Assembly (NCBI GenBank): GCA_001179505.1
Contig: CDMY01000836.1
Location: forward strand, 1-16,193
Source: Vitrella brassicaformis CCMP3155
Lineage: Eukaryota > Protista > Chromerida
Reading direction: 5' to 3'
Length of the DNA: 16,193 nucleotides
Shown here: piece after piece, positions 1 through 16,193 of the stretch
Numbering within the stretch: position 1 is the stretch's first letter
Layout of the letters: the number at the start of each line of letters is the position of its first letter
Position numbers and translations under genes: made by a program
The notes under the pieces: model-generated
The model's database searches: none
What the model saw: the letters and a program-made list of their open reading frames with translations, nothing else
Told to the model about the DNA's origin: nothing

Positions 1-250
1 ACGTAGAAGTGATCGCCAAACTTGTCCACCTCCCCGCCGCAGATGCATCGCTGCGAGACGGTTGCGTGCGGGAGGGCAATGCCGAGCCCATTTGCTTTCT
101 CCCTCGACTCGGGAACCCCCAGCGTTATGACCTAAGAGCAAAGCAAAGCAAAGCAACAGCGCATATGTAAAAGTGTGGGACCCGCTCAATTGCTCACTTC
201 GCTGCTTCTGTTGTGCTCGCTTGGCCCCGCTTTGGCGTCCCCGATCTCGG
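1..250 (-). CDS. Partial intron-containing gene with a CxC..D..GDH zinc-knuckle-like motif (resembles the CCHC region of restriction-like-endonuclease non-LTR retroelements); runs off the left edge
   Basis: Exon 250-198 (AEIGDAKAGPSEHNRSSE, donor GTGAGC) joins in phase 0 to exon 131-1 (VITLGVPESREKANGLGIALPHATVSQRCICGGEVDKFGDHFY; acceptor CTCTTAG after a (GCTTT)n tract). The gene structure is seen in the sequence; the family assignment is pattern recognition only. 5' exons are unresolved. Confidence 0.5.
138..156. repeat. (GCAAA)n microsatellite forming the polypyrimidine tract of a minus-strand intron
   Basis: gcaaagcaaagcaaagcaa read directly. Confidence 0.9.
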
Positions 251-1134: not shown

Positions 1135-2663
1135 TCAGGAGTGGAAGTGTTTCTTGTGCAGCCGCACCTGCTTGACCACCGGCCAGGCCGTCTTCTTGAT
1201 GTCCACACACACGACTGACCCTCAGGCGTCTGAAGCACCAGTAAAACAACCACACACAACCACACAGACATCCACGTCGATGACATCCGCGTGAGTGTGC
1301 ATATGTACCCTCGGGCAGGCGGTGAGCAGGGTCTTGACCTCCCGCTCGTCGATGGCGGCGTCGGTCAGCTGATGAGACAGCTCCTTGGCACTCAACTCCT
1401 CGCCACATCGATCCAACGCCTGACAGGGAGGGAGGCAGACATCAGGACTGCAGTTGTTGGGCTGTGTGTGGTGGCCAGCCTGCCTGTTCCAGTTGGGATG
1501 CGAAGGCAGCGGCGGCTTCGTCTCCGATGCTGTCCACCTCCTGTGCACGCACACTCTTCTCAAACGACAGCATCGAAGGGATCACAACTGCACGCCTCAC
1601 ACACAGAGAGGAATCAGATAAGTGGATGGATTGGTCATGTGTTGGCTGCGTGTCTGAGACGGACCGACAGCACGGGGGATGAAGTCTCCGTACGACACAC
1701 GGCCGTCGGGCTCCTGCAGGCACCCACACAGACACACGTGAGCCATCAATTGCCTGGCCATGCTGCATCTGTCTGCCTGACCAGTGTGGCCTCGGACATG
1801 ACGGTGTAGATCTGGAAGCGCGTGAGGCCGAGCTTGACCGAGTGGATGAGGTCGATCATGTCGTCAGGGTCCAGCATACCGCTCATCTGATCACAGACAG
1901 ACAGACAGACAGAGACACACGCATGGATTGAGACACACGCAGTACTTACCTCAGTGTCTCTCGATCGAACAAGTCCTTGAGGAACTGCGCCAGCTCATCC
2001 TGCTTCCTCTCATTCTCCAACAGACGCAACGTCGCTGCACGAGAGACAAAGACGAGAGGGATGGCAGGATTCTCCACACACATACACACATACGTCCCCT
2101 TACTCACCGAGCTTGTGCAGCATGTCGTAGGCGAACGGCACGAACTCTGAACCCCACGGCGAAAGAGAAGCGCCTTCACTTATGCACTTTTTGTGTCGGT
2201 ACCGTTGTAGTTGATGGTGCCGTCGTTGTCTTGGTCGACCACGTGGAACAACAGTGCGTTCAACTCACGACTGCACACAGACACAGGCACAAACAAGGCT
2301 ATCGATGCAGGCGGGCAAGAGAGACATGGAGATGACCGGTTCAGCCCGAGCTCCATGCTGCACATGGTGTCGATGAACTCACTCCTGCACACAAGGGGAG
2401 AGATGTACACATATTAAGAGACACAGCAGCCAACACGTATCAAGCGACGCTGACCTGGAAACGAATCCTTTGCCGTCCTTGTCAAACTCCTTGAACATCG
2501 TCATGATGGTCTCCGTCAACTCTTCCCTGTACGAGACACGCACACGGGCGAGCACAGAGACGCACACGTGCATCGTGGCACTGTCTGTCTGTCTGTCTGT
2601 CTACTTCGCCGTCATGCCCTGCACCAGAAACTCCTCGGCCTCCTTCTCAGCCACCTGCATCTC
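1135..2663 (-). CDS. Multi-EF-hand calcium-binding protein, apparently frameshifted twice; 5' end unresolved (possibly a pseudogene)
   Basis: Spliced peptide EMQVAEKEAEEFLVQGMTAKEELTETIMTMFKEFDKDGKGFVSRSEFIDTMCSMELGLNRRELNALLFHVVDQDNDGTINYNEFVPFAYDMLHKL... with canonical loops DKDGKGFVS and DQDNDGTIN and degenerate later loops. Intron phases agree except exon 2034-1950 (85 nt, needs 86) and last exon 1229-1135 (95 nt, needs 96). One GC-AG intron (1483-1420). Confidence 0.8.
1894..1912. repeat. (GACA)n intronic microsatellite
   Basis: cagacagacagacagacag in an EF-hand gene intron; similar (CTGT)n at about 2581-2600 and elsewhere. Confidence 0.85.
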
Positions 2664-3117
2664 CTGAAAACAACAAGCACAACCACCATACAGGGAACCA
2701 CCTGGAGCTCCCGACCGTCTCGCACTGCTCTTTCACCCACCCGTTCAGCCTCTATCCGCCAATGCATGGATGCATCCATCGATGCGTGGCTGCCTGCTGT
2801 AATTGAACGGCTGTCGCCCGCGCCTAGCTGCCTCGTACGTCCGCGGCCGTGGATAAAGCGACAGCACTGTCTGTCTTCCTTCTTGTCTATCGATGAGTTT
2901 AAGTAGATCCATGAAACGGGCGACGAAGTTCGTCTAAGCATCAGTTCGTATCAGCAGAAACAATGGACAACGCTCATTGACGGCGAAAACATGTCGCACA
3001 CTGCAAACAAGCGTGAGACATGCAACGTGACATACACATTCTGGACCCAGATCCAGCCAGCCACCTCACAGCCCCGCAGCGGGGCTGGTGTGTGGCCTTG
3101 TCTATCTCTCTGGGTGT

Positions 3118-4678
3118 CTATCTGGTCAGCCGAAAGCTGTTCGCCATCCGTCGCAGTTTGTCGCTCTCGGCAGCCCACTCGTCTTCCGGCGACACGACAG
3201 TGAGGGAAAACAGCTTGTCCCCTCGACACGCGATGACAGAAAGGTTGTTGTACTCGAATGGCTGGACAACCCCCCTGACGATGTACTCAAACAAATACAC
3301 CTCCCTGAAACATCGCACACAAGACACATCGGTGGGTCAGGTGAACGACCAGCAGCTGTCTCACTGACCCTCCTGGCTCTCTCTGTTCGCTGAGCGCATC
3401 AATCAGCATGGCGACTTTGCCTGAGCCCTCTGGCGCTATCGCCTCGCGCAACAGAGTCTCAGCCGCCTGCATTCATACATATATTACCATGACACAGGTG
3501 GCACACGCACACAAAACAGATGAGGTGTATTTGCCTGCTTTGGCGGCCCGAGGAGAGAAAAGAAGGCTCGGTCATCCGTCAGCCTTAAAGTGCTCTTCAC
3601 CACCGAGACGTTCTCCTGATACATCAGGGCAAACAGAGCACCTCCCGTCAATGTGTGACGTGTTATCCATCCATCCATCCATCCGTGTGCTGAATTCACC
3701 TTGGCGTCTCCTCCACCCCCGGGCGGTCCGAAGGCCACATCGGGTGCCTCGCTTTGTGCAGCAGCCCTCTTAACAGGCCGGCCCTCGTCAAATGATGCAG
3801 CCAATGGCCGCCGAGCGGCATCCTGAACAGTCAAACAACACCATAGTTGAGCAAACAGGTGTCTGTCCATCGATCCAGACAGTCGGCCTTTGCTGTACCT
3901 TTGCTGTGTACAGCGCGACGTCTGCTAGCCAATTTGATGGGTACAAGAACTCGTTCTTGTAGAGTCAAGTACCCATCAAATTGGCTGGAAATCGACACAG
4001 AGGGAGGGAACAAACAGACAACACAATGTCGCTCAGCGTAACCATCTTCAAGTAGTGGCTGACGTGTGCCGCTTCTCGTGTGTACCGGTGGGCAGGTCCC
4101 AGCCGGTACGAGTACCCATCCACTTCATTGACGTACCTGCACGCAGCAACAAGACGGCACTCACATGTACGGCGCATCCCTTGCCTCCCTTCTCGGTGTG
4201 CTGCTTGCCTTTTAAATCCATCAATGGGGTAGATCACATCAAGCCTGAGTTTTCTTGCCTGCTCAGGTGACAGCCGCAGAAGAGCCGAAGTAATGCCGAA
4301 CAGATTGGCACCAAGGGCAACTACCGCGGCGCCCTGTGAGGACGTCAAAGGGGGAATGAATGTAATCCAGCCACCCGCAACCGCCCACTTACCAGAAGCA
4401 CAAGAAAGCGGCGGCGGGGTGTGATGCTGTCAGGCTCTGCAGGCACAACACAGGATTCATAGATCTGATGAATGAAGATCTCGAGCAGCACCAATCTCCT
4501 GCAGCAGCCTGTCGTTTCTTCGTTGGCGCAGCTTGACGCTTCTTCTCATTGGCAGCAGGGGCTGCACAAACAGAGTGGATCTGAGGAATGACTCTCCTGC
4601 AGCACCAATCTCCTGCAGCAGCAGCCTGTAGTTTCTTCGTTGTCGCAGCTTGACGCTTCTTGTCATTGGCAGCAGGGG
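3118..4678 (-). CDS. PsbP-domain thylakoid lumen protein (PPD-type, resembles the PPD7/At3g05410-like group), interrupted by a 34-nt inverted insertion at an exon boundary
   Basis: Exons 4436-4393, 4333-4209, 4136-4110, 3950-3899, 3822-3700, 3615-3535, 3466-3369 and 3304-3118 are phase-consistent. They give ...PRRRFLVLLGAAVVALGANLFGITSALL...RLDVIYPIDGFKRYVNEVDGYSFLYPSNWLAD...AFGPPGGGGDAKENVSVV...LGPPKQAAETLLREAIAPEGSGK...YLFEYIV...LFSLTVVSPEDEWAAESDKLRRMANSFRL. A twin-Arg plus hydrophobic stretch suggests a Tat signal. N-terminal exons are duplicated (4678-4606, 4561-4492); start codon uncertain. Subfamily is from memory of homologues, not a search. Confidence 0.85.
3927..3986. repeat. Nested inverted repeat (fold-back): 18-bp outer arms, 9-bp inner arms, 2-nt loop
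   Basis: agccaatttgatgggtac (3927-3944) / gtacccatcaaattggct (3969-3986) perfect; tacaagaac (3942-3950) / gttcttgta (3953-3961) perfect. Confidence 0.97.
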
Positions 4679-4697
4679 CTGCACAAACAGAGCGGAT
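4485..4697. repeat. Tandem duplication, 114-bp period, about 1.9 copies, covering one exon plus flanking intron of the PsbP-like presequence
   Basis: Copies start at 4485 and 4599 (gcagcaccaatctcctgcagcagc...gctgcacaaacagag); they differ by a 3-nt GCA indel and a few substitutions. Confidence 0.95.
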
Positions 4698-4843
4698 GAC
4701 GGAGAAATACGCTGACGGCATGTCGCCGCCTCAGCAAGGCACGGCATAGGTGCCACGTGTGTTGGTTTGATGGAACAGCTGTCCCTAACACTCCGGCCCC
4801 GTCAGACGAATGTCTGTCTTTCTCCCCTCAGGATAGAGCAAAT

Positions 4844-7390
<2,547 letters not shown>

Positions 7391-8017
7391 GGGAATGTGT
7401 GACATGCCCCTTCTTCCTTTTTCCTGAGTCGAGAATTTTGGACCGGGCTAAGTAGCGATGATGTTATCAAAGTGGTGCAGTGTGCCTTGTGAGTGAGGTG
7501 GCGGTTTTGATCGCACCCCAACCTCAGCCTCACGGCTTGGTGACAGGGGGGCTTGTGAGAGGGAGGGTGGGTGCATCATCGATGGGAAGAATTGCTCGTA
7601 TGGCCGTCCGTCCGTCTGTGTGCGTGCTCGTTTCATCATCTGTCAGTGAGAGAAAGAAAGGAGAGGGCAGGTATGGCAATCGGCGATGTGGTTTGTGGCG
7701 TGTCTTGTGTGGCTGTGGCCATTTTGTCACCTGAGTGCGTGCGTGCATGCGCCTGTGTTTTTCGACTGAGTCGGTCACACTCAGTCTATGTCACAGAACA
7801 ATGCTGAGGCACTGGAAGTATATGTCATCATACCGGGTATGTCTTGTGTCCGCCCTGGCCCTTCATCCATAAGACACGGACTAACACAACCCAGATTATA
7901 AAACCCCAGATTGGCTAGGGTTCCAGCAAACCAAAAAGCGGCAAACGGAGAGCATCTCCTTCGTGTGCCTGCCGACTCCATCCATCCACCCATCCATCCC
8001 TCAAACGAAAGGCAGCG

Positions 8018-10282
8018 ATGAGCAAGCGGCATCAGCGCCGTCCGATGCTGAACATGGAGGAGTCCCTCAACCCCAAAGTGGACTCCTTCTCATGGGCCGT
8101 GTAAGAAAGCAAAGATGCAGTGCACAGAGGAGATCCAGGAATGAATGCATTGATCCATTTGTGTGGTGGGATGTGGTGTGTGTGTTGTGTTGGTCCCTGT
8201 TCAGGGATGCGCAAGGCAACCTGCAGCATCGTGACACCGGGGTCAAGCTGGGCAGGGAGGGCATCGAAGTCGAGGGAGAGGAATTTGCCGTCAGAAGAGA
8301 TGAACTAGAGGTGACAGACAACCACAACTGTCATGGATACTGCCGCATGAAGGATCTTTCTGTGTTGTGTTGTGTTGTGTTGTGCTGCGTGTCAGTTTGA
8401 CCCAAACAACGTGATAGGCCGGGGCGCCTCAGGTGCGGTGATCAAGGCCTTTCACAAGCCCAGGAACGAATGGGTGGCACTCAAGGTGACGACCAAACAA
8501 ACCAAGACCAGGTGCACGGCAGCAACGGCGTTTGGGTTTTGTGCAGGAGATCAAGATAGAGGACAGGGGGAAGCGCCACCAGCTGCTGGGAGACCTCAAG
8601 GTGGGGACGGACATAGAGCAACGGACCGCATGCATGTGTCTGTGTCTTCATGTGTATGCGCAACTCATGAATGTGGACACGTTGCTGAGTGCAGGGCATG
8701 GTGCAGGCCAAGGGGTGTCAGTTCCTGGTCGAGTTCATCGGCGCATACATCGAAAGGGCATGTAAGAGTAGTCGGCATACGACTCGCACCATGGCTGTTC
8801 TTATCGCCACACGCAAACGTGTTTGTATGCTTGGTTGGTTGGTTGTTGGTTGCTCGGTGCAGCGTCGGTGCATTTGGTGATGGAGTTCATGGATCGCGGG
8901 AGCATCTTCGATCTCATCCGACACTGCAAGAAGCGCAACATCAGCATACCCAGCCAAGTGCTCGCCGCTATCATACACCAGGCATGCAGACACACATCCG
9001 TCCATCTCTCCATCTGTGCACCCAATTCCTTCGTGGATTCATTTCTTCTCTGTTCGTCTGTCTGTGCGGATCCATTGTTGGGCTGCAGGTGTTGGTGGGT
9101 CTGCAGTTTCTGCACCAGAAGGCCATAATCCACCGCGACATCAAACCCCAAAACATACTTGCCAACTCCAAAGGTCAGTCACTGACTGACCGACACACAG
9201 CATAGACTCGTTATTCACAGTGTGCCTGTGGTTACATCCCTTCCCTTTGACCTGTCTGGCTGCAGGTTTCATCAAGGTGTCAGATTTCGGCATCGCCAAG
9301 TCCGTCACGAGCATGAACAACACCTTCGTCGGCACTTCCATATACATGTATGTATGTATGTACCCGTAGCTGCACACATGTACACACCCATTCACATACA
9401 TAATCAGTCCATCAAGGCGATCGCACAATGCGTGTGGGGTGGGGCTGTGGTGTCTGGTGCAGGAGTCCCGAGCGGGTGCTGGGTCAGGCGTATGACGTGT
9501 CGGCGGACATATGGTCGATGGGCATGGTCTTCTACGAACTCATCACAAAGGCAAGACAGACACACAGGCACACAGACAGACACGTTATCGAGCGGAAGAA
9601 GCACGATGCGCATATCAACGACATGAGTCAAGAGCTGTGTTGACTTCTTCTCAGGACCCTCCCATTCAGAACCAGAACAACTTCACGGAGCTGTTTGATG
9701 TGCTCATCAACAAACCGGGTACACAGCACAGCGCTCTACAGCAGTGGCAGACATGTCATTCATTCATGGTGTCCTTGGCTCTCTTTCACTCATTCGCTTA
9801 TACGTCCAGAGCCCCGTTTGTCGGCAGCGTACGACCAGGGCCTGCGGGATTTGGTCGAGGGATGGTACGTGTGGATGTTTACGTGCATGCGTACACACAA
9901 GGGGTCCTGATGTGTGCACAATGTGTTCGTGCAGTCTTCAGCGCGACCCCAGTAGGCGAGCATCCGTTGATGACCTCCTGGTAGGCACACACACAAACAG
10001 CCAGATAGACAGACACGACAGACAGACACGAATGGGTGGGGTGCATGAGTGCCAACGTCAATGTGCTGCTGTGCTTGGGTGATCCGCCCGTCCTTCAGAA
10101 ACACCCGTTCCTGAGTGGCGGGCCGAATGTCGATATCGTCAGACAGTAAGCGAGAACAAACCTACCTACACGCGACCGAGAAACATCGTCTCGCATGTGC
10201 CTGTCTGTCTGTCTGTCTGCCTCTCCCACTGTGGGCCTATGTGTGCGTGTGTAGGTTCTTTGAGTATGCATACAGCGCTTAG
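8018..10282 (+). CDS. MAP kinase kinase (STE7/MAP2K family), about 337 aa, intact
   Basis: 14 exons (8018-8100, 8205-8310, 8396-8485, 8547-8600, 8695-8761, 8863-8981, 9089-9173, 9266-9347, 9463-9550, 9655-9718, 9810-9864, 9935-9980, 10099-10145, 10255-10282), total 1014 nt in frame. N-terminal basic/hydrophobic docking-like motif KRHQRRPMLNM, GRGASG, VALK, HRDIKPQN, DFGIAKSVTSMNNTFVGTSIYMSPER, DIWSMG. Two GC donors (8982, 9551). Confidence 0.92.
8361..8384. repeat. (TGTGT)n intronic microsatellite
   Basis: tgtgttgtgttgtgttgtgttgtg directly upstream of the exon 3 acceptor of the kinase. Confidence 0.85.
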
Positions 10283-11544
10283 GAGACACACAAACATTGC
10301 AAAGGAGCAGCGGTCTTTCCATCCATGAGTGATGCGTACGTAGTGCACATACGTGTACGTGTACGTGTGTACAGACAGACAGGTTGCCGACTGTTTGGCG
10401 TATTGTGTCAGTTGTGCATCCATATGGTAGAATCTCTCCGCGTGTCCATCTGTGCTTTTATGTGTCCGTCTGTGGGTGTCGAGCTGTCGTGTTGATTCTG
10501 CACAGTGACGCGACACAAACGCTACGACGCACAATACGGACTCGTGCATGTATACAAGCATCTGAATGGCACAAAGGCACGCCCCGTGTCCAAAAGCTCG
10601 TGCCGTCCTTGACCGAGCCGTCTGCAAAACCTCCCAAACACACCAAAAAGAGAAAAGGTAGAAGGGTGAAAAGAACACCAGAAACTAGATGGAGAAATTT
10701 TAGAGATACATCTCGAACAGGCGGACAGACAGACAGACAAAGCCGGCAGACACAACTCTTCATTCATCCATCCATCAATCAGCCACTACACATGTACACA
10801 CACATTTGACCTCCTTCCTCTCCCTCCCCTTTCCCCCTTCAATTCTCCCGACTCCCGAGTGTCTCAGTGGTATGCGGGCGAAAACCGGAGGGACGGTCCT
10901 TAACAGTAAGCAAAAGAAAGTTAAGCCAGGTGAGTGAGACAGTCCATCGCTAGCTGAGCGGACATGCAGAGAGAATAGAGCGAGAAGCAGGGGTCTTGCA
11001 TGCAAAGCTCCGACTGCATTGCACGTCGCCAAACTCATACAGACAGATCCGATGCCTTCGTGCCGCTAAACGAATGAGTCGTGAGGGCAGAATTCCCTCA
11101 AAGCCACGCGTCCGTATGTATCAGCCTGTCAGGGTCTACGTACCGCAGGACAAACATGTTCATATAGGCACTGTTAGGCAGCCCCGTGCAGTACACATAC
11201 GCTACCGGCAAATGCCATGCCCAGCAGTCGCATCCTTACCGCATTGGGCTCGCTCTCACGTAACACATCTCTTTTCCTTGTGCTGCTGTCGGTGCCCCAT
11301 TTCGATGAGCACAAGGACCGCGAGGCCCGCGACCCTCTCCGCCAGGCGCTCGCCAGATGGATCAAACATCTGCATCACAAACACATACATGTACTCGGGT
11401 GGGGTGGATACATCGATGCACCGCACCCACTAACACCATGCGGAAGTAGGACTTGATAGTGTCGACTGTCTTGCGCTCTTTGTTTGGCGGCCCCACTCGC
11501 CCAGCACACTCACCAGGTAGTGGATGCTCAAGTGCTGACACATC

Positions 11545-11603
11545 AGACAGACAGACGACAGACAGGCAGACAGAAAGACAGGCAGGCAGGCAGGCAGGCA
11601 GGC
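11545..11603. repeat. Compound (GACA)n/(GGCA)n intronic microsatellite
   Basis: cagacagacagacgacagacaggcagacagaaagacaggcaggcaggcaggcaggcaggc. Confidence 0.85.
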
Positions 11604-12208
11604 TGACAGAGACATGGCAACGATGGCGAGAAGGAGAGGAGCTTGCCTGGAACTCCTCTCCCGGGTTGAAGTACGGGGGGCCGATTTGTCGAGGCCCGAG
11701 CAGCTGTAGTCTGTCAGCTTGGACACAAAGACGAGAACAGCTGCACAAAGAGACAGCAGCGACACAGCCCCTAATTCCCCCTCCCCCACCCACTTCATTG
11801 CATTGCATGCATGTCCTTCTCCCTACCTGTAGGGCCCTGCTCGTGTCGTCCATCTCGTGGTTCTGCTTAGTGTCCCACTCCCCCATCACACCTGGGCGAT
11901 GTAGAACCTCCCGTCGTGCTCGTCATAACACAGGCAGTAGGTCTTGGGGTGCGTCGTCCTGGTCGACGCCAGCACACAGATCCTGCCCTTGGCGAGTCCG
12001 TCGGCGATTTGTGAGGCCAGGAGCTTGCGGAAGGTGACTTTGAGGAAGGTGCTGGTGCTGGCCGATGGTGATGGTCTGAATGCGGTTGTACCCACCGGCC
12101 ACCTGAAACAAGTATGAGAGACAAAGCACGGAGGCCCCATGTGTTCGTACGCCAACCTACCGGTGAGCTTAATGCCGTGGGGGAAAGCTGAAGGCGTTGC
12201 GTCGCGTT

Positions 12209-12245
12209 GCTCTTCCGGGCTCAAACCCGGAAGAGCCCGGAAGAG
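12209..12245. repeat. Nested inverted repeat with tandemly duplicated arm
   Basis: ctcttccgggctc (12210-12222) / gagcccggaagag (12233-12245) perfect 13 bp; cccggaagag occurs twice in tandem (12226-12235, 12236-12245). Confidence 0.95.
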
Positions 12246-12903
12246 AGGTCCGTAAGGAGAGTGGTATCGCGTTCTCTGGGGCGATCACTGATTGAGCGAG
12301 TCGCGAAGCGGCAAAGGCCGTGATGGACACTGACGGCCAGCAGCAGCAGCAGGCCACGGCATGCCACACCGCACACAGCATAGATCTGGAGGCCTTCGCA
12401 CAGCGCTGCGGCCAAATCGTAATACTTGATGCACCAGACAAACCACTGGCACGCACACATCCTCATTGTTTCCTCTCTCTGCGTGGTGTGGCGGTATGAC
12501 ATCAGCTGGAGGGGAGGTGAGGAAGATGCGCTGACTCTCAAACCACTCGACACCTGACGAAGGACGACAGGTGCGTGCGGTTTGGCTACCAGTGCCGATG
12601 GTGTGTGTTGGGCTGTATGTTTGCCTGTCAGGTCGGGCCATCAATTGATGCGTAGAATGAGTTGCAGAGGGGACGATGTGGGGGTACCACGACGGCGGGA
12701 TGCTCTCATGTGTGGGCGCTGTGGGGTGGACTAAGTAAGCTGCATCGCTCGTGGATAAATGCCTGTGCTGGACTTGTACAGACACACATGAGGACCGAAC
12801 GTTGAGCTCCCTACGTATCAGCCCCCCAACATATGCAGCGACACGTGCGTCCAGACCAACCACACACCACTCATACCGTCTTTCTGGCTGTCTCACAATC
12901 TGT

Positions 12904-13612
12904 CTATCGGACAAGGTCTTCCCCGCTCTCAATCATGGGCTGCCCCATCCCCTCCAGTCGCTTCTTCTCCCTCTCCCTCGCCTCAGCCAGCAGCTCCTTA
13001 TCGAGCCCCATGGTGCGGTAATACTCGTGCATGGTCATCTTCTTGGCCATCGCCACCCACGACCGCATGCTTGAGCCACTCGCCCACATTATACTTGGCC
13101 ACCTTGCCGGCGCGGGACAGCTGGTACTGCCAGTCGGGCTGCATCAACACGGCCTCATCGGGACCTGGACGCACTCTAACACACACAGATGGAGAGAGAG
13201 AGACCAACATTCCTTGGTAAGCTCCGACTGTGTGTCTGTTGTCCTAGTCCGTGTGTGTGTGTACCTCATGGCATAGACGAAGCCAAGATTGAAGATGGGC
13301 ACGACTTGAAGAGGGGTGATTGACATCCCCCCGGCACCAGACACTTGAAGGCAGCCACACGGTTCGCCAGGCTGTCGGGCCGCCTGATCTGGTAGGTAAT
13401 GTCCGCATAGAGAGGAACCGATTCATCCGCAGGAGGCACCGGGCGCCCCATGCAGTGAGCACAACGCCAGTGCCGATGTAGATGGAGGGCGCCACATACT
13501 CGTGCTGGATGGCCCGTAGCAGGCCCTGGATGTTGCGCCGGATGACGTGCCTGTCAGTGGTCTCCCCAGGCCGCTGCGGCGGCTCCACCAGCATCGATGC
13601 GTCGCTCTCCAT
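12904..13612 (-). CDS. Hypothetical protein (about 195 aa) with two hydrophobic stretches; +1 frame discontinuity in the last exon
   Basis: Exons 13612-13345, 13304-13265, a 23-nt micro-exon 13227-13205, and 13164-12904: MESDASMLVEPP...YVAPSIYIGTGVVLTAWGARCLL...WLPSIVPIFNLGFVYAMSRSLPRNVGPDEAVLMQPDWQYQLSRAGKVAKYNVGEWLKHA // WVAMAKKMTMHEYYRTMGLDKELLAEAREREKKRLEGM...VR*. The last exon is 1 nt too long for its phase. Confidence 0.65.
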
Positions 13613-13621
13613 CGCCCAGAA

Positions 13622-15002
13622 ATTCGGGACTCAGCAAAGCTACGAGCGAGGCACGCTCTTGCCCAAAGTTCGTGTTCTGTCCGTAATTGGGGCCGAGCGA
13701 GACTTTGTCTGACAGACCCACGAAACCAATCGAGGTGAGGACGCAAACAAGGGTTTCGTGTGTGTCGTCTAAATGTTGTGTGGTGTTGACGTGTGTGTCG
13801 CATTTTATGGTGCAGAACACGGGGTTTCGCAACGACCTGTTGAGGTGTCCTTCTGCCTCGTGTGTTTTGGGAGCGTGCGCCCCACCCGCGATCCAAGCCG
13901 ATGACGCAGATGCCCTACTTTCCTCTTCGCCCCCGAGACCTTCTGGACGTCCACCGAGGCCCACCCAGCAAAGGAAATGGGATTTCTTTCACACTCCACT
14001 TGCCGGATGACTTGGTAGCCCAGCTCTCCCGTCTCCCAGCCGGCAAACTATCAGCTCCACCACCGGCGTCGTCTCACGAGAATGCCTGGCCGCCTCTCGA
14101 TGGTGCGTGCACCAGCTGGACCGGAATTGCAGAATCTGCGATAAGTTCATCCCATTTCAGTGGAATTCGAGCTAGAAGCCAACCGATGGCAGTTGGATAG
14201 CCGAGACAAGCTCGTTGTCGACGCAAGAGAGGAGGTCAGTGACGACGGATCCCCTGAAGGTTGATTTTTTTCGTGTCTGCATATTGCAGTTCTCGAGAAG
14301 TCTTGACGTGTTGGAACGGTGTGAGGCACAGTGTCGCCGACACAAGCAAAATCGAGATGAATGGTCTGCTGTGCTACGCAAGGGCGGAAACACAGATGCC
14401 AAGTGTGGCTTGTTTGTCGCTGCAATATGGAGTTTATATCCTCTTCTTGACGCATTGGAGAAGATGGCACAATCGTCTGATGCCTCGAAGCCTCCAAACG
14501 GTCGAGTGTCTCAGGGGAATGAGCGACTGGAAGCCATCCTACAGGCGCTTGAGAGTGCACAGGGTCGAGATACAACGAGAGACACGCAGCGAAAACATGA
14601 TGTCGATCAGAGGTATTCAGATTATAAATGAGTCATGACGAGAGCAACTTTGTTCTTGCTTTCCTCAGCCATCGGGCATGGACGGCTCCACACACGCCCA
14701 CGCCCACGCGTCAGGTCAAGCATACCAACAGCCCGCCCAATCGCATCCGCGTCACAATATCGACAGGCCATCACACGCCCAGTGAGCCCGCCAGCCCGCA
14801 GCGACACGAGGCTGGACAGCGATTGTCGCCACCCCGCAATAGGGTCAGGAGGTTGGCGTCGTTCGGATCCAACGCCGCAGCGAGCAGGACAAGGTGGATG
14901 TTTGTCTGTATTTATTTGTTGGTCTGCAGATTCGACTGTGCGGGAAAAACAAAGGACCGCCGGCTCGTGCATGACGAGTACACGGACTTTCAGTCCATCT
15001 GA
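13622..15002 (+). CDS. Hypothetical Pro/Ser-rich protein, at least 8 exons, one +1 frameshift near 14298; start codon unresolved
   Basis: Exons ...-13667, 13716-13752, 13816-13844, 13898-14102, 14161-14259, 14290-14612, 14669-14893 and 14930-15002 with GT-AG introns and matching phases at all seven junctions. Exon 14290-14612 is 1 nt too long (VLEK // LDVLERCEAQ...). No family recognised. Confidence 0.55.
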
Positions 15003-15338
15003 CGCCGTTTCCATTGTTTCTCGTCATCATGTGCGTGTCGAATTATCTGTACATACAACTGACATGCAAGTGATGGCGATCAATAGGTCGTCACGGCTCA
15101 TGCGATTTGCATGGAAAAAACTTAAGGATCATGGCCAAAACATCCACCAGGCGAATCGCTCAAAAGCAGGACCGTTGTGGGGTCCAGCGTCTCGCTATGC
15201 TGGATCCCTGCATTGAGAGAGGCACGTCTGCCTGTGTTCTGTCTCGATGCACTGCATGTCGGTGCACGTGGCTGCCTGACCTGATGACATAAAAAGATCA
15301 TCAATTAATGTACATACATTTTGTTACAAGTCTAATGA

Positions 15339-15946
15339 CTAACCGTCCTCTTCTGGCAACTCCTCCTCTCTTTTCCCCTTCTTGCTTGCCCTCGTACGCA
15401 TAGCCCTCGTACGCATAGCCACCCCCTCACCAACCTCCCTGGCCTGTTCTTCCACCGCCTGAGCGGCGAGCTCCGACGAAGGCACCTCATCCCGTGCCCA
15501 TTCTCTATACTCAACAGCCATCTGAATAGCCCTATCTACATCATCTCTGTCAGCAGACAACACTCAGTCTCGGAATCTCTTGTCGAATGTGTGGTCACCG
15601 TGCACGAGCTGACATCGAACGTACACCCTGCTGACTTCTGGCTGACTTGGGGATCATGTCCATCTCTCCTGAGTCCAACAGACAAGTGCTTCCTGTCAGG
15701 CCAGCCTTCCTCGTCTTGAGGGGGCAAAAAGTCCAGACGCGTGTGCACCGCCGCCTTCGCCTCTTCGGACCCTCCCGGCTGGCGAACGTGTAATCTGACA
15801 TGTCCGTGCCGTCCCAACCGATGCGCCTACGTGTCTGGTCCCTCCAAACAGTGGCCTCACGAATGGCATCCTTGACGCCCTCCTCGGTGGCCGAGAGGAT
15901 GCGGAAGTAACGTCGTTGGCCGACATGGAGATCCATCTGGCGCAGT
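15339..15946 (-). pseudogene. ApiAP2-type transcription factor with two AP2-like domains, disrupted by frameshifts and an in-frame stop
   Basis: Domain 1: GQRRYFRILSATEEGVKDAIREATVWRD. Domain 2: VYVRCQLVHGDHTFDKRFR[D*]VLSADRDDVDRAIQMAVEYREWAR. Both match the AP2 beta3/alpha-helix pattern (R.F....A...A..WR/YR). The segments lie in three different frames. Acceptor at 15946; upstream exons not resolved. Confidence 0.7.
15388..15420. repeat. 15-bp perfect tandem duplication (encodes AMRTR AMRTR in the AP2 tail)
   Basis: gccctcgtacgcata x2 plus gcc. Confidence 0.95.
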
Positions 15947-16115
15947 CTGATGACAAAAATCAATTTCCTCATGACTGCATGTTGCATCTCTCGAGCTGCT
16001 CCTGACGGTTTGGAAGAATTTTCTTGATGACTGCACGACGGTTTTCGATACTGCCTGACTGACGTCGGCAATGTAAACGAATCGCCAACACTCGGCAATG
16101 ACGAGGTCTCTGCAG

Positions 16116-16193
16116 ATGGAGTGGGACTACGTCTTTCGCGTCGTGCTCACCGACGAGTGCGCTCTCAGCCCCCTCCGCGAGGCCATCGCCAAG
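16116..16193 (+). CDS. Start or internal exon of a gene running off the right edge (MEWDYVFRVVLTDECALSPLREAIAK)
   Basis: Follows the acceptor-like TCTCTGCAG; 26 open, GC3-rich codons up to the window end; product unknown. Confidence 0.55.
   Translation, partial: MEWDYVFRVVLTDECALSPLREAIAK

What the first reader, a model, noticed from the sequence alone, without database searches (positions are those of the whole stretch)
1135..15946. Six genes broken by indels while two central genes are spotless
Seen: phase accounting shows about 14 lesions across the EF-hand (2), PsbP (1), 11.3-12.6 kb gene (about 6), 12.9-13.6 kb gene (1), 13.6-15.0 kb gene (1) and AP2 gene (3 or more). PRMT3 plus MAP2K (2883 coding nt, 24 exons) have none. 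The lesions are 1-nt indels, mostly in short G/C runs, or templated insertions. The only internal stops I found lie inside or beside insertion structures, and splice sites and codon bias persist. Inference: three options. (a) A recently duplicated segment losing genes through an indel-biased, end-joining-type mutational process, with only two genes under selection. (b) Frames restored after transcription by insertion editing or frameshifting, which would be a new system for this lineage. (c) Locally unpolished consensus.
Basis: partly seen in the sequence, partly recalled or inferred. Interest (0 to 1): 0.75.

Follow-up and report, generated by a model that had tools for sequence, protein, structure and literature searches.

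The report
Decaying duplicate genes around two essentials
On this small scaffold of the alga Vitrella brassicaformis, the broken genes are spare copies of genes that sit intact elsewhere in the genome, while at least one of the two unbroken central genes has no spare, so this is ordinary decay of redundant duplicates, not a new RNA-repair system.

Summary
The window is a whole 16.2-kb scaffold of Vitrella brassicaformis CCMP3155.

Four flanking genes are gene-sized, intron-bearing copies of genes on four other scaffolds: EF-hand, PsbP, and unnamed genes X and Y. The compared stretches of those genes read open. The lesions are deletions of 1, 1, 1, 1, 7, 19, 29 and 34 nt, and insertions of 4, 17 and 159 nt.

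PRMT3 is single-copy and full-length. MAP2K was only partly checked.

- **Editing or frameshifting:** two transcripts from an independent transcriptome project (MMETSP) carry gene Y's 7-nt frameshift uncorrected, which argues against it.
- **Assembly error:** the assembly is Illumina/Velvet/ICORN and the lesions are heterogeneous, which makes this unlikely.
- **Special mutational process:** the indel-to-substitution ratio in exons equals that of flanking non-coding DNA, so none is needed.

Pooled dN/dS of 0.24 says the copies worked for most of their history. Other notes of this scan report broken gene copies elsewhere in this genome.

Verdict: ordinary unprocessed pseudogenes. The PsbP insertion is an instructive templated repair scar.

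The parts
1..86 (.). Scaffold-end repeat, 100% identical to copies on C629, C479 and C62
464..2753 (-). Block A: EF-hand pseudogene, a copy of C395:17264-19969. Exons lie at 2660-2605, 2526-2455, 2384-2337, 2270-2203, 2146-2108, 2034-1950, 1886-1782, 1713-1665, 1587-1484, 1419-1309 and 1229-1135. One-nt deletions lie between 1966/1965 and 1214/1213. The spliced frame stops after about 104 codons, whereas the paralogue reads 259 open codons.
2759..4788 (-). Block B: PsbP pseudogene, a copy of C413:70596-72165. Exons lie at 4333-4209, 4136-3899 (holds the insertion), 3822-3700, 3615-3535, 3466-3369 and 3304-3118. The 5' exon model is unresolved in both copies.
2834..3098 (.). Extra sequence that is missing from the C413 copy. 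W2898-3098 belongs to a short dispersed repeat family with more than 40 copies at 73-90% identity.
3953..4111 (-). 159-nt complex insertion inside PsbP exon 3. Its core, about W4103-3985, is an 84% copy of C393:41287-41410: the end of an exon plus a whole 101-nt GT..AG intron of another gene. Next comes a fold-back: W3969-3986 is the exact reverse complement of W3927-3944. A 10-nt direct repeat sits at both ends (W3968-3977 = W4111-4120). An in-frame TGA lies at 3967-3965.
4844..7387 (+). PRMT3-like arginine methyltransferase, single copy and intact. It is CEM34870.1 (639 aa), encoded in about 10-11 exons.
7900..10800 (+). MAP2K-like protein kinase with no close second copy; a distant kinase relative lies on C445. 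Pkinase segments are collinear and the best solved relative is MKK5. It was not checked exon by exon. Bounds are approximate.
11069..11390 (.). Fragment similar to C331:18956-19477 (91% and 73% in two pieces) and to C522, C40 and C447. It lacks about 250 nt that C331 has.
11433..12491 (-). Block C: gene X pseudogene (no Pfam family), a copy of C633:24883-23810. Lesions in the exons at 12102-11827, 11740-11647 and 11534-11438 are +4 (about 12055), -1 (11889), -19 (11731), -1 (11685) and -34 (11485). Homology ends about 24 codons before the paralogue's stop codon. W12315-12491 is also a dispersed repeat.
12484..13623 (-). Block D: gene Y pseudogene (no Pfam family), a copy of C1036:214635-213435, which encodes the intact CEM39414.1 (216 aa). 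Exons lie at 13612-13265 and 13175-12904. Lesions are -12 (in frame, about 13593), -7 (about 13410, loss of one unit of a 7-nt tandem repeat), +17 (about 13322-13306) and -29 (about 13070).
13650..15100 (.). It has no paralogue in the genome and no Pfam match. Its nature and its claimed lesion are unverified.
15354..15921 (-). It aligns to the open 455-codon ORF on C588 in three successive frames: 15921-15772, 15769-15662 and 15629-15354. It is 90% identical to C667 over 15653-15911. The public model CEM34874.1 reads on in the wrong frame after the break near 15772.
16089..16193 (.). Scaffold-end repeat, 96-99% identical to at least 25 copies. Five other scaffolds start inside copies of the same element, and those copies are 100% identical to each other over 485-862 nt.

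Best explanation
The scaffold carries PRMT3, which is single-copy and intact, and MAP2K, which has no close second copy and was only partly checked. They are flanked by DNA-level, intron-bearing duplicates of genes whose partner copies read open elsewhere in the genome. These duplicates are old. Most of their divergence accrued under purifying selection, so they probably worked for a long time. Being redundant, they later escaped selection. They are now unprocessed pseudogenes that collect the genome's normal mix of small deletions, slippage events and an occasional templated insertion. The central genes stay unbroken because they have no back-up copy, not because mutation avoids them. Shown: the copies, the lesions, the open reading of the compared parts of the partners, the divergence pattern, and one lesion present in RNA. 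Inferred: the order of events, the direction of duplication and the repair pathways.
For: - **Source:** the window is the whole scaffold C836 of a 72.7-Mb, 1064-scaffold assembly. Names on P0004 and P0006 identify it as V. brassicaformis CCMP3155 (paper PMC4501334).
- **Copies:** each broken gene has a collinear copy with the same introns on a different scaffold, and the central region has no close second copy.
- **Partners read open:** EF-hand 259 codons, PsbP 231, gene X 172, gene Y = CEM39414.1 of 216 aa, and the C588 family ORF of 455 codons.
- **Derived state:** a distant JGI homologue, P0003, supports the partner's frame at gene Y, so the window's state is the derived one.
- **Lesions:** positions and sizes are.
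- **RNA:** MMETSP transcripts 42476 and 42477 have window-specific residues and keep the 7-nt frameshift.
- **Divergence:** exon divergence is 5.0% against 13.1% in non-exon sequence. Pooled dN/dS is 0.24.
- **Indel rate:** the exon indel-to-substitution ratio does not differ from the non-coding ratio (P = 0.44), and 10 of 13 exon indels are not multiples of three.
- **PRMT3:** it is full-length.
- **Wider pattern:** other notes of this scan report broken gene copies elsewhere in this genome (not tested here).
Against: - No genomic reads could be examined, so only one of about 13 lesions has independent support.
- The same MMETSP transcripts lack the +17 and -29 lesions of gene Y. In that stretch they look like the C1036 copy, so they are either chimeric assemblies or a different allele in another strain. 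That leaves those two lesions unconfirmed.
- Pooled dN/dS of 0.24 is lower than expected if the copies had been dead for long. About 8-10 exon indels would be expected against 13-14 seen, a mild excess.
- Why at least five unlinked duplicates sit side by side is unexplained.
- The direction of duplication is not established.
- MAP2K and the 13.6-15.0 kb region were not fully checked.
Confidence: 0.75

Rival explanations
1. Assembly artefact. The flanks are paralogous regions that the short-read assembler or the gap closers (GapFiller, IMAGE) reconstructed badly. On this view the real copies are intact working genes, which would also explain the low dN/dS.
For: - The window is a small scaffold ending in repeats.
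- The lesions lie only in regions that have paralogues.
- dN/dS of 0.24 looks like that of working genes.
- The MMETSP transcripts lack the +17 and -29 lesions of gene Y.
- Gap-closing steps were used in the assembly.
Against: - The assembly used Illumina reads corrected with SGA, Velvet at k = 75 and three ICORN rounds. A de Bruijn assembler does not invent junction k-mers (my knowledge of the method).
- Reads from the intact paralogue, if mis-mapped, would push a consensus towards the intact state.
- The 7-nt lesion is present in an independent transcriptome.
- The PsbP insertion has an organised structure of ectopic template, exact fold-back and direct repeat, typical of DNA repair and not of assembly.
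- The window copies carry many private substitutions, so they are real distinct loci.
Confidence: 0.1
2. One-off template-switching repair. A single replication-based or end-joining event, such as microhomology-mediated break-induced replication or polymerase theta-type repair, copied gene-sized pieces from several loci into this region. The same error-prone synthesis introduced many of the indels.
For: - The flanks are a patchwork of blocks from at least five scaffolds that abut within a few bases: 2753/2759 and 12484-12491.
- Non-coding divergence is similar in all four blocks, at 11-14%.
- The PsbP insertion shows template switching on a small scale.
- There is a mild excess of exon indels.
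Against: - Exon divergence is 2.6 times lower than non-exon divergence and dN/dS is 0.24. The copies were therefore under protein-level selection after they arose, which a dead-on-arrival patchwork would not show.
- The synonymous divergence estimates for the four genes range from 0.08 to 0.20.
- No terminal repeats or transposon features bound the blocks.
Confidence: 0.1
3. Frames restored after transcription, by insertion or deletion editing or by programmed ribosomal frameshifting, so that the genes still make full proteins.
For: - Splice sites and exon sequence are well kept.
- Substitutions created no stop codons.
- At least one copy is transcribed.
Against: - The transcripts of gene Y keep the 7-nt frameshift and are split into two open reading frames.
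- Lesions of 1, 4, 7, 17, 19, 29, 34 and 159 nt share no motif.
- Each broken gene has an intact partner that makes restoration unnecessary.
- The absence of nonsense substitutions is not significant: by a hand estimate of mine, not from a tool run, about 2 would be expected.
Confidence: 0.02

Closest known systems
Unprocessed (duplicated) pseudogenes
   Same: They are DNA-level copies that keep their introns. An intact partner gene lies elsewhere in the genome. Frameshifting indels are disabling, deletions outnumber insertions, and transcription may persist.
   Different: Pair-wise dN/dS is still low at 0.24, so disablement is recent relative to duplication. At least five unrelated copies are clustered around two single-copy genes. 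The public annotation still lists them as genes: CEM34874.1 is read in the wrong frame.
Templated insertions of polymerase theta-mediated (alternative) end joining, or filler DNA at repaired double-strand breaks
   Same: The PsbP insertion combines a copy of a distant locus, an exact 18-nt snap-back copy of the adjoining sequence and a 10-nt direct repeat at its two ends. Several deletions have 1-7 nt of junction homology.
   Different: No enzyme or pathway was tested here. The ectopic template is about 120 nt, longer than most reported theta-type inserts (my knowledge, not checked here), and it holds a whole intron with both splice sites.
Programmed ribosomal frameshifting and insertional RNA editing
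   Same: Only that the genomic reading frames are interrupted while the exon sequence looks well kept.
   Different: There is no shared slippery or editing motif. Lesion sizes range from 1 to 159 nt. The RNA keeps the one frameshift that could be examined.
Patchwork duplication zones, such as subtelomeric or pericentromeric mosaics in yeast, human and Plasmodium
   Same: Blocks copied from many loci are joined end to end, rich in pseudogenes and bordered by young repeats.
   Different: No telomeric repeat or chromosomal position is known for this scaffold. Two single-copy, probably essential genes lie in the middle.

Membership tests
Unprocessed (duplicated) pseudogene | A partner copy elsewhere in the same genome that reads open where compared | tested here: met
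   Partners on C395, C413, C633, C1036 and C588 read open over the stretches compared.
Unprocessed (duplicated) pseudogene | Introns retained and collinear with the partner, so it is not a retrocopy | tested here: met
   The alignments run through exons and introns.
Unprocessed (duplicated) pseudogene | Frame-disrupting lesions relative to the partner | tested here: met
   About 13 lesions. The window's spliced EF-hand frame stops at codon 104.
Unprocessed (duplicated) pseudogene | Relaxed constraint on substitutions | tested here: inconclusive
   Pooled dN/dS is 0.24. This fits recent disablement only.
Unprocessed (duplicated) pseudogene | Lesions are real in the organism's DNA or RNA | tested here: inconclusive
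   The 7-nt lesion is present in MMETSP transcripts, while +17 and -29 are absent from them.
RNA editing or programmed frameshift recoding | The transcript or the translation restores the frame at the lesion | tested here: not met
   Transcripts 42476 and 42477 keep the 7-nt shift and give two separate ORFs.
RNA editing or programmed frameshift recoding | A common signal or a uniform lesion type | tested here: not met
   Lesions range from 1 to 159 nt, with both insertions and deletions in unrelated contexts.
Assembly or consensus error | An error type typical of the sequencing platform and pipeline | tested here: not met
   The pipeline was Illumina, SGA, Velvet at k = 75 and three rounds of ICORN. 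The lesions include organised 19-159 nt events.
   The window piece gave no AP2 hit at E up to 0.1. The intact 455-aa relative gave none at E up to 0.01. C836 is not among the 150 AP2 matches scored in this genome.
PsbP family | A match to Pfam PF01789 above its cut-off | tested here: met
   The last exon scores 35.3 bits against a cut-off of 23.5, E = 1.5e-8.
Protein arginine methyltransferase (PRMT3-like) | A methyltransferase core plus the PRMT C-terminal subdomain, at full length | tested here: met
   PrmA scores 27 bits and PRMT_C 64.6 bits. The 639-aa product aligns over residues 35-639 with 613-621-aa relatives.
MAP kinase kinase | A protein kinase domain with closest similarity to MAP2Ks | tested here: inconclusive
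   Pkinase scores 55 bits and the best solved relative is MKK5, but on two short stretches only. Profile positions 71-108, 105-136 and 162-212 are collinear.
End-joining templated insertion | The insert is copied from other sequence, with a snap-back copy and a junction repeat | tested here: met
   An 84% copy of C393:41287-41410, an exact 18-nt inverted copy of the neighbouring exon and a 10-nt direct repeat.
End-joining templated insertion | Dependence on polymerase theta or another named pathway | not testable with these tools
   This needs genetics or biochemistry.

The most novel reading that the evidence does not exclude
The flanks may record template-switching break repair in a chromerid. 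That repair would copy gene-sized pieces from many loci into one place. In the PsbP exon it dropped a complete foreign intron, with both splice sites, between 10-nt direct repeats. This would be a caught-in-the-act example of the break-repair route proposed for intron gain (the proposal is my recollection of the literature, not checked here), in a lineage close to apicomplexans.
Probability: 0.12. Interest if true: 0.55.

Novelty: new member of a known kind. Interest (0 to 1): 0.27.

Why it matters
- **Annotation:** several entries on this scaffold, for example CEM34874.1, are models built across frameshifts and should be flagged as pseudogenes. Counts of gene families in Vitrella that include such copies are inflated.
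- **Mutation spectrum:** the lesions give a small, clean sample of how neutral DNA decays in a chromerid. Deletions dominate. There is slippage at short repeats. One insertion is templated from another locus and has a fold-back.
- **Redundancy:** only genes with a back-up copy are broken.
- **What it is not:** it gives no support for a new editing or recoding system.

Tried and rejected
- **Exact look-up** of ten raw window ORFs, including controls, found none in the protein collection, so it was uninformative.
- **A word search with the PsbP piece** W3968-4429 found nothing, so there is no RNA test of the 159-nt insertion.
- **The last word search**, on the right-end gene, returned only the public model and a JGI fragment identical to the C667 copy.
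- **A metagenome scan** with the intact gene Y protein found nothing.
- **Transposon capture** (Pack-MULE or Helitron type) was considered. No terminal inverted repeats bound the blocks, only (CAGA)n microsatellites.
- **A subtelomeric location** was considered. Scaffold ends are high-copy repeats with no telomeric repeat and no Pfam match.
- **A contaminating related strain** was considered. It was rejected because the centre has no close second copy in the assembly.
- **The first dN/dS value for the EF-hand gene** was invalid because exon 1 was misaligned. It was redone without exon 1.
It was redone with coordinates only.
- **Joined spliced models** were not sent to any search tool. Searches were exon by exon or ORF by ORF, by reference, and joined coding sequences were used only for counting inside scripts.

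Full report
**What the window is.** The window is the whole of scaffold C836 (16,193 bp) in an assembly of 72.7 Mb and 1064 scaffolds. Two public proteins that map to a 16,193-bp contig, CEM34870.1 and CEM34874.1, are named Vitrella brassicaformis CCMP3155. The size and scaffold number match the published genome (PMC4501334). That assembly is Illumina-only. Reads were corrected with SGA and assembled with Velvet at k = 75. SSPACE, GapFiller, three rounds of ICORN, IMAGE and REAPR followed. Both scaffold ends run into high-copy repeats.

**The flanks are copies and the centre is not.**
- DNA searches of the same genome show that the flanks consist of gene-sized blocks. Each block is similar to a different scaffold:
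  - W464-2753 to C395:17264-19969
  - W2759-4788 to C413:70596-72165
  - W11433-12491 to C633:24883-23810
  - W12484-13623 to C1036:214635-213435
  - W15653-15911 to C667, and more distantly to C588, C293 and C380
  - W11069-11390 to C331
- No similarity continues beyond each block, by DNA or by translated search.
- The centre, about W4800-10800, has no close second copy. The kinase has only a distant relative on C445.
- Pfam confirms EF-hand (weakly, on a short piece), PsbP, a PRMT-type methyltransferase and a protein kinase. The best solved relative of the kinase is the MAP2K MKK5.
- Genes X and Y, the 13.6-15.0 kb region and the right-end gene match no Pfam family.
The window piece has no hit. 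Its intact 455-aa relative has no hit. The scaffold is absent from the 150 AP2 matches scored in this genome.

**The lesions are there.**
- Alignment of each block with its partner shows the same exon-intron layout. The partner reads open in each case:
  - 259 codons for EF-hand exons 2-11
  - 231 for PsbP and 172 for gene X
  - 216 aa for gene Y, annotated as CEM39414.1
  - 455 codons for the C588 family member
- Against these the window carries:
  - EF-hand: -1 and -1
  - PsbP: +159 with an in-frame TGA
  - Gene X: +4, -1, -19, -1 and -34
  - Gene Y: -7, +17 and -29, plus an in-frame -12
  - Right-end copy: two frame changes and truncation
- A distant homologue from a JGI sample (P0003) has the partner's frame across the -7 and +17 sites of gene Y. 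The window's state is therefore the derived one.

**The central genes.** CEM34870.1 (639 aa) maps at about 100% identity onto W4844-7387. Only a 12-residue stretch is not placed, probably a micro-exon. The protein aligns from residue 35 to its end with PRMT3-like proteins of 613-621 aa from other organisms. PRMT3 is therefore intact. For the kinase I can only say that the Pkinase pieces lie in the right order. I did not verify all its exons.

**RNA evidence.**
- A word search with exon 1 of the intact gene Y copy returned two MMETSP transcripts of V. brassicaformis: 42476 (P0001) and 42477 (P0002, UniRef A0A7S1P943).
- Both carry residues private to the window copy at the 5' end, and both carry the 7-nt deletion. 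The coding sequence is therefore split into a 109-aa and a 156-aa ORF.
- So the window-type copy is transcribed and spliced, and the frameshift is neither corrected in RNA nor an artefact of this assembly.
- The same transcripts lack +17 and -29. In that middle stretch they match the C1036 copy at every diagnostic residue, then turn window-like again at the 3' end.
- I read this as either a chimeric transcript assembly of two 95%-identical paralogues or a converted allele in another strain. The UniRef record carries the species-level taxon, not CCMP3155. It leaves +17 and -29 unconfirmed.

**How the copies evolved.**
- Substitution divergence is 5.0% in exons and 13.1% outside them.
- dN/dS is 0.29 for EF-hand, 0.16 for PsbP, 0.33 for gene Y and 0.24 for gene X. 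Pooled it is 0.24, with synonymous divergence of about 0.11.
- A copy dead since birth would give a pair value of about 0.55, which is rejected (P about 1e-11). The copies were therefore constrained for most of their history and were disabled later.
- Indel events against substitutions are 14:129 in exons and 42:287 in non-exon sequence (P = 0.44). Ten of 13 exon indels are not multiples of three, as neutrality predicts.
- A rough calculation from these numbers expects 8-10 exon indels against 13-14 seen. That is a mild excess at most.
- The lack of nonsense substitutions is not significant. By a hand estimate of mine, not a tool result, about 2 would be expected.
- Nothing here calls for a special mutational process. 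Selection on unique genes and its absence on redundant ones explains the contrast.

**The PsbP insertion.**
- The 159 nt at W4111-3953 sit in the middle of exon 3.
- The core of the insert is an 84% copy of C393:41287-41410. That template is the last ~20 nt of an exon plus a complete 101-nt GT..AG intron of an unrelated gene.
- The core is followed by an exact 18-nt reverse-complement copy of the adjoining PsbP exon. The whole insert lies between 10-nt direct repeats.
- Left unspliced, it brings in a stop codon. Spliced at the imported sites, it leaves 58 nt and shifts the frame.
- This is the signature of template-switching break repair.
- Among the deletions, -7 removes one unit of a 7-nt tandem repeat. 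The others show 0-2 nt of junction identity.

**Limits.**
Neither genomic reads nor read-based contigs could be examined.
- Two of the three word searches gave little.
Searches went exon by exon, by reference.
- The direction of duplication, the reason for the clustering and the 13.6-15.0 kb region remain open.
- Other notes of this scan report frameshifted gene copies elsewhere in this genome. I did not test them, but they fit a genome with many young pseudogenes.

**Verdict.** The explanation is ordinary decay of redundant duplicates. Editing is contradicted where it could be tested, and assembly error is unlikely but not excluded site by site.

Noticed in passing
window 4208-4207, 3534-3533, 1483-1482; L012 (C633) gene X: Several introns that both paralogous copies share seem to start with GC instead of GT (exon...AG|GCAAG). 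The EF-hand partner reads open only if the GC donor at W1483 is used.
   Followed up: partly
window 2898-3098: A dispersed repeat of about 200 nt with more than 40 copies at 73-90% identity. Here it lies in extra sequence, 3' of the PsbP pseudogene, that the C413 copy lacks. I found no clear terminal inverted repeat.
   Followed up: partly
window 16089-16193 and 1-86; L041-L048: The scaffold ends lie in two different high-copy elements. Five other scaffolds start inside copies of the right-end element. Those copies are 100% identical to each other over 485-862 nt, so the repeat is very young. Its ORFs match no Pfam family.
   Followed up: partly
window 4479-4697: A tandem duplication of about 117 nt (93% identical units) upstream of the PsbP pseudogene.
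   Followed up: no
window 4460-4333 and L004 (C413): The apparent first PsbP exon (ATG at 4460, donor at 4392) is out of phase with exon 2 in both the window copy and the intact-looking C413 copy. The true 5' end of this gene is therefore not understood.
   Followed up: no
window 15125-15945 (CEM34874.1): The public protein model reads straight through the frameshift near 15772 in the wrong frame and adds two downstream exons. It is probably an artefactual protein.
   Followed up: yes
MMETSP transcripts 42476/42477 against window 13612-12904 and L011: The transcripts are window-like at the 5' end, like the C1036 copy in the middle and window-like at the 3' end. This is either a chimeric transcript assembly or gene conversion in another strain.
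   Followed up: partly
window 11069-11390: A further gene fragment related to C331, C522, C40 and C447 lies between the kinase gene and gene X. Relative to C331 it lacks about 250 nt.
   Followed up: partly
L003 (C395), locus positions about 3225-3470: The intact EF-hand partner has a run of N, a scaffold gap of 300 N, inside the intron between exons 5 and 6.
   Followed up: no
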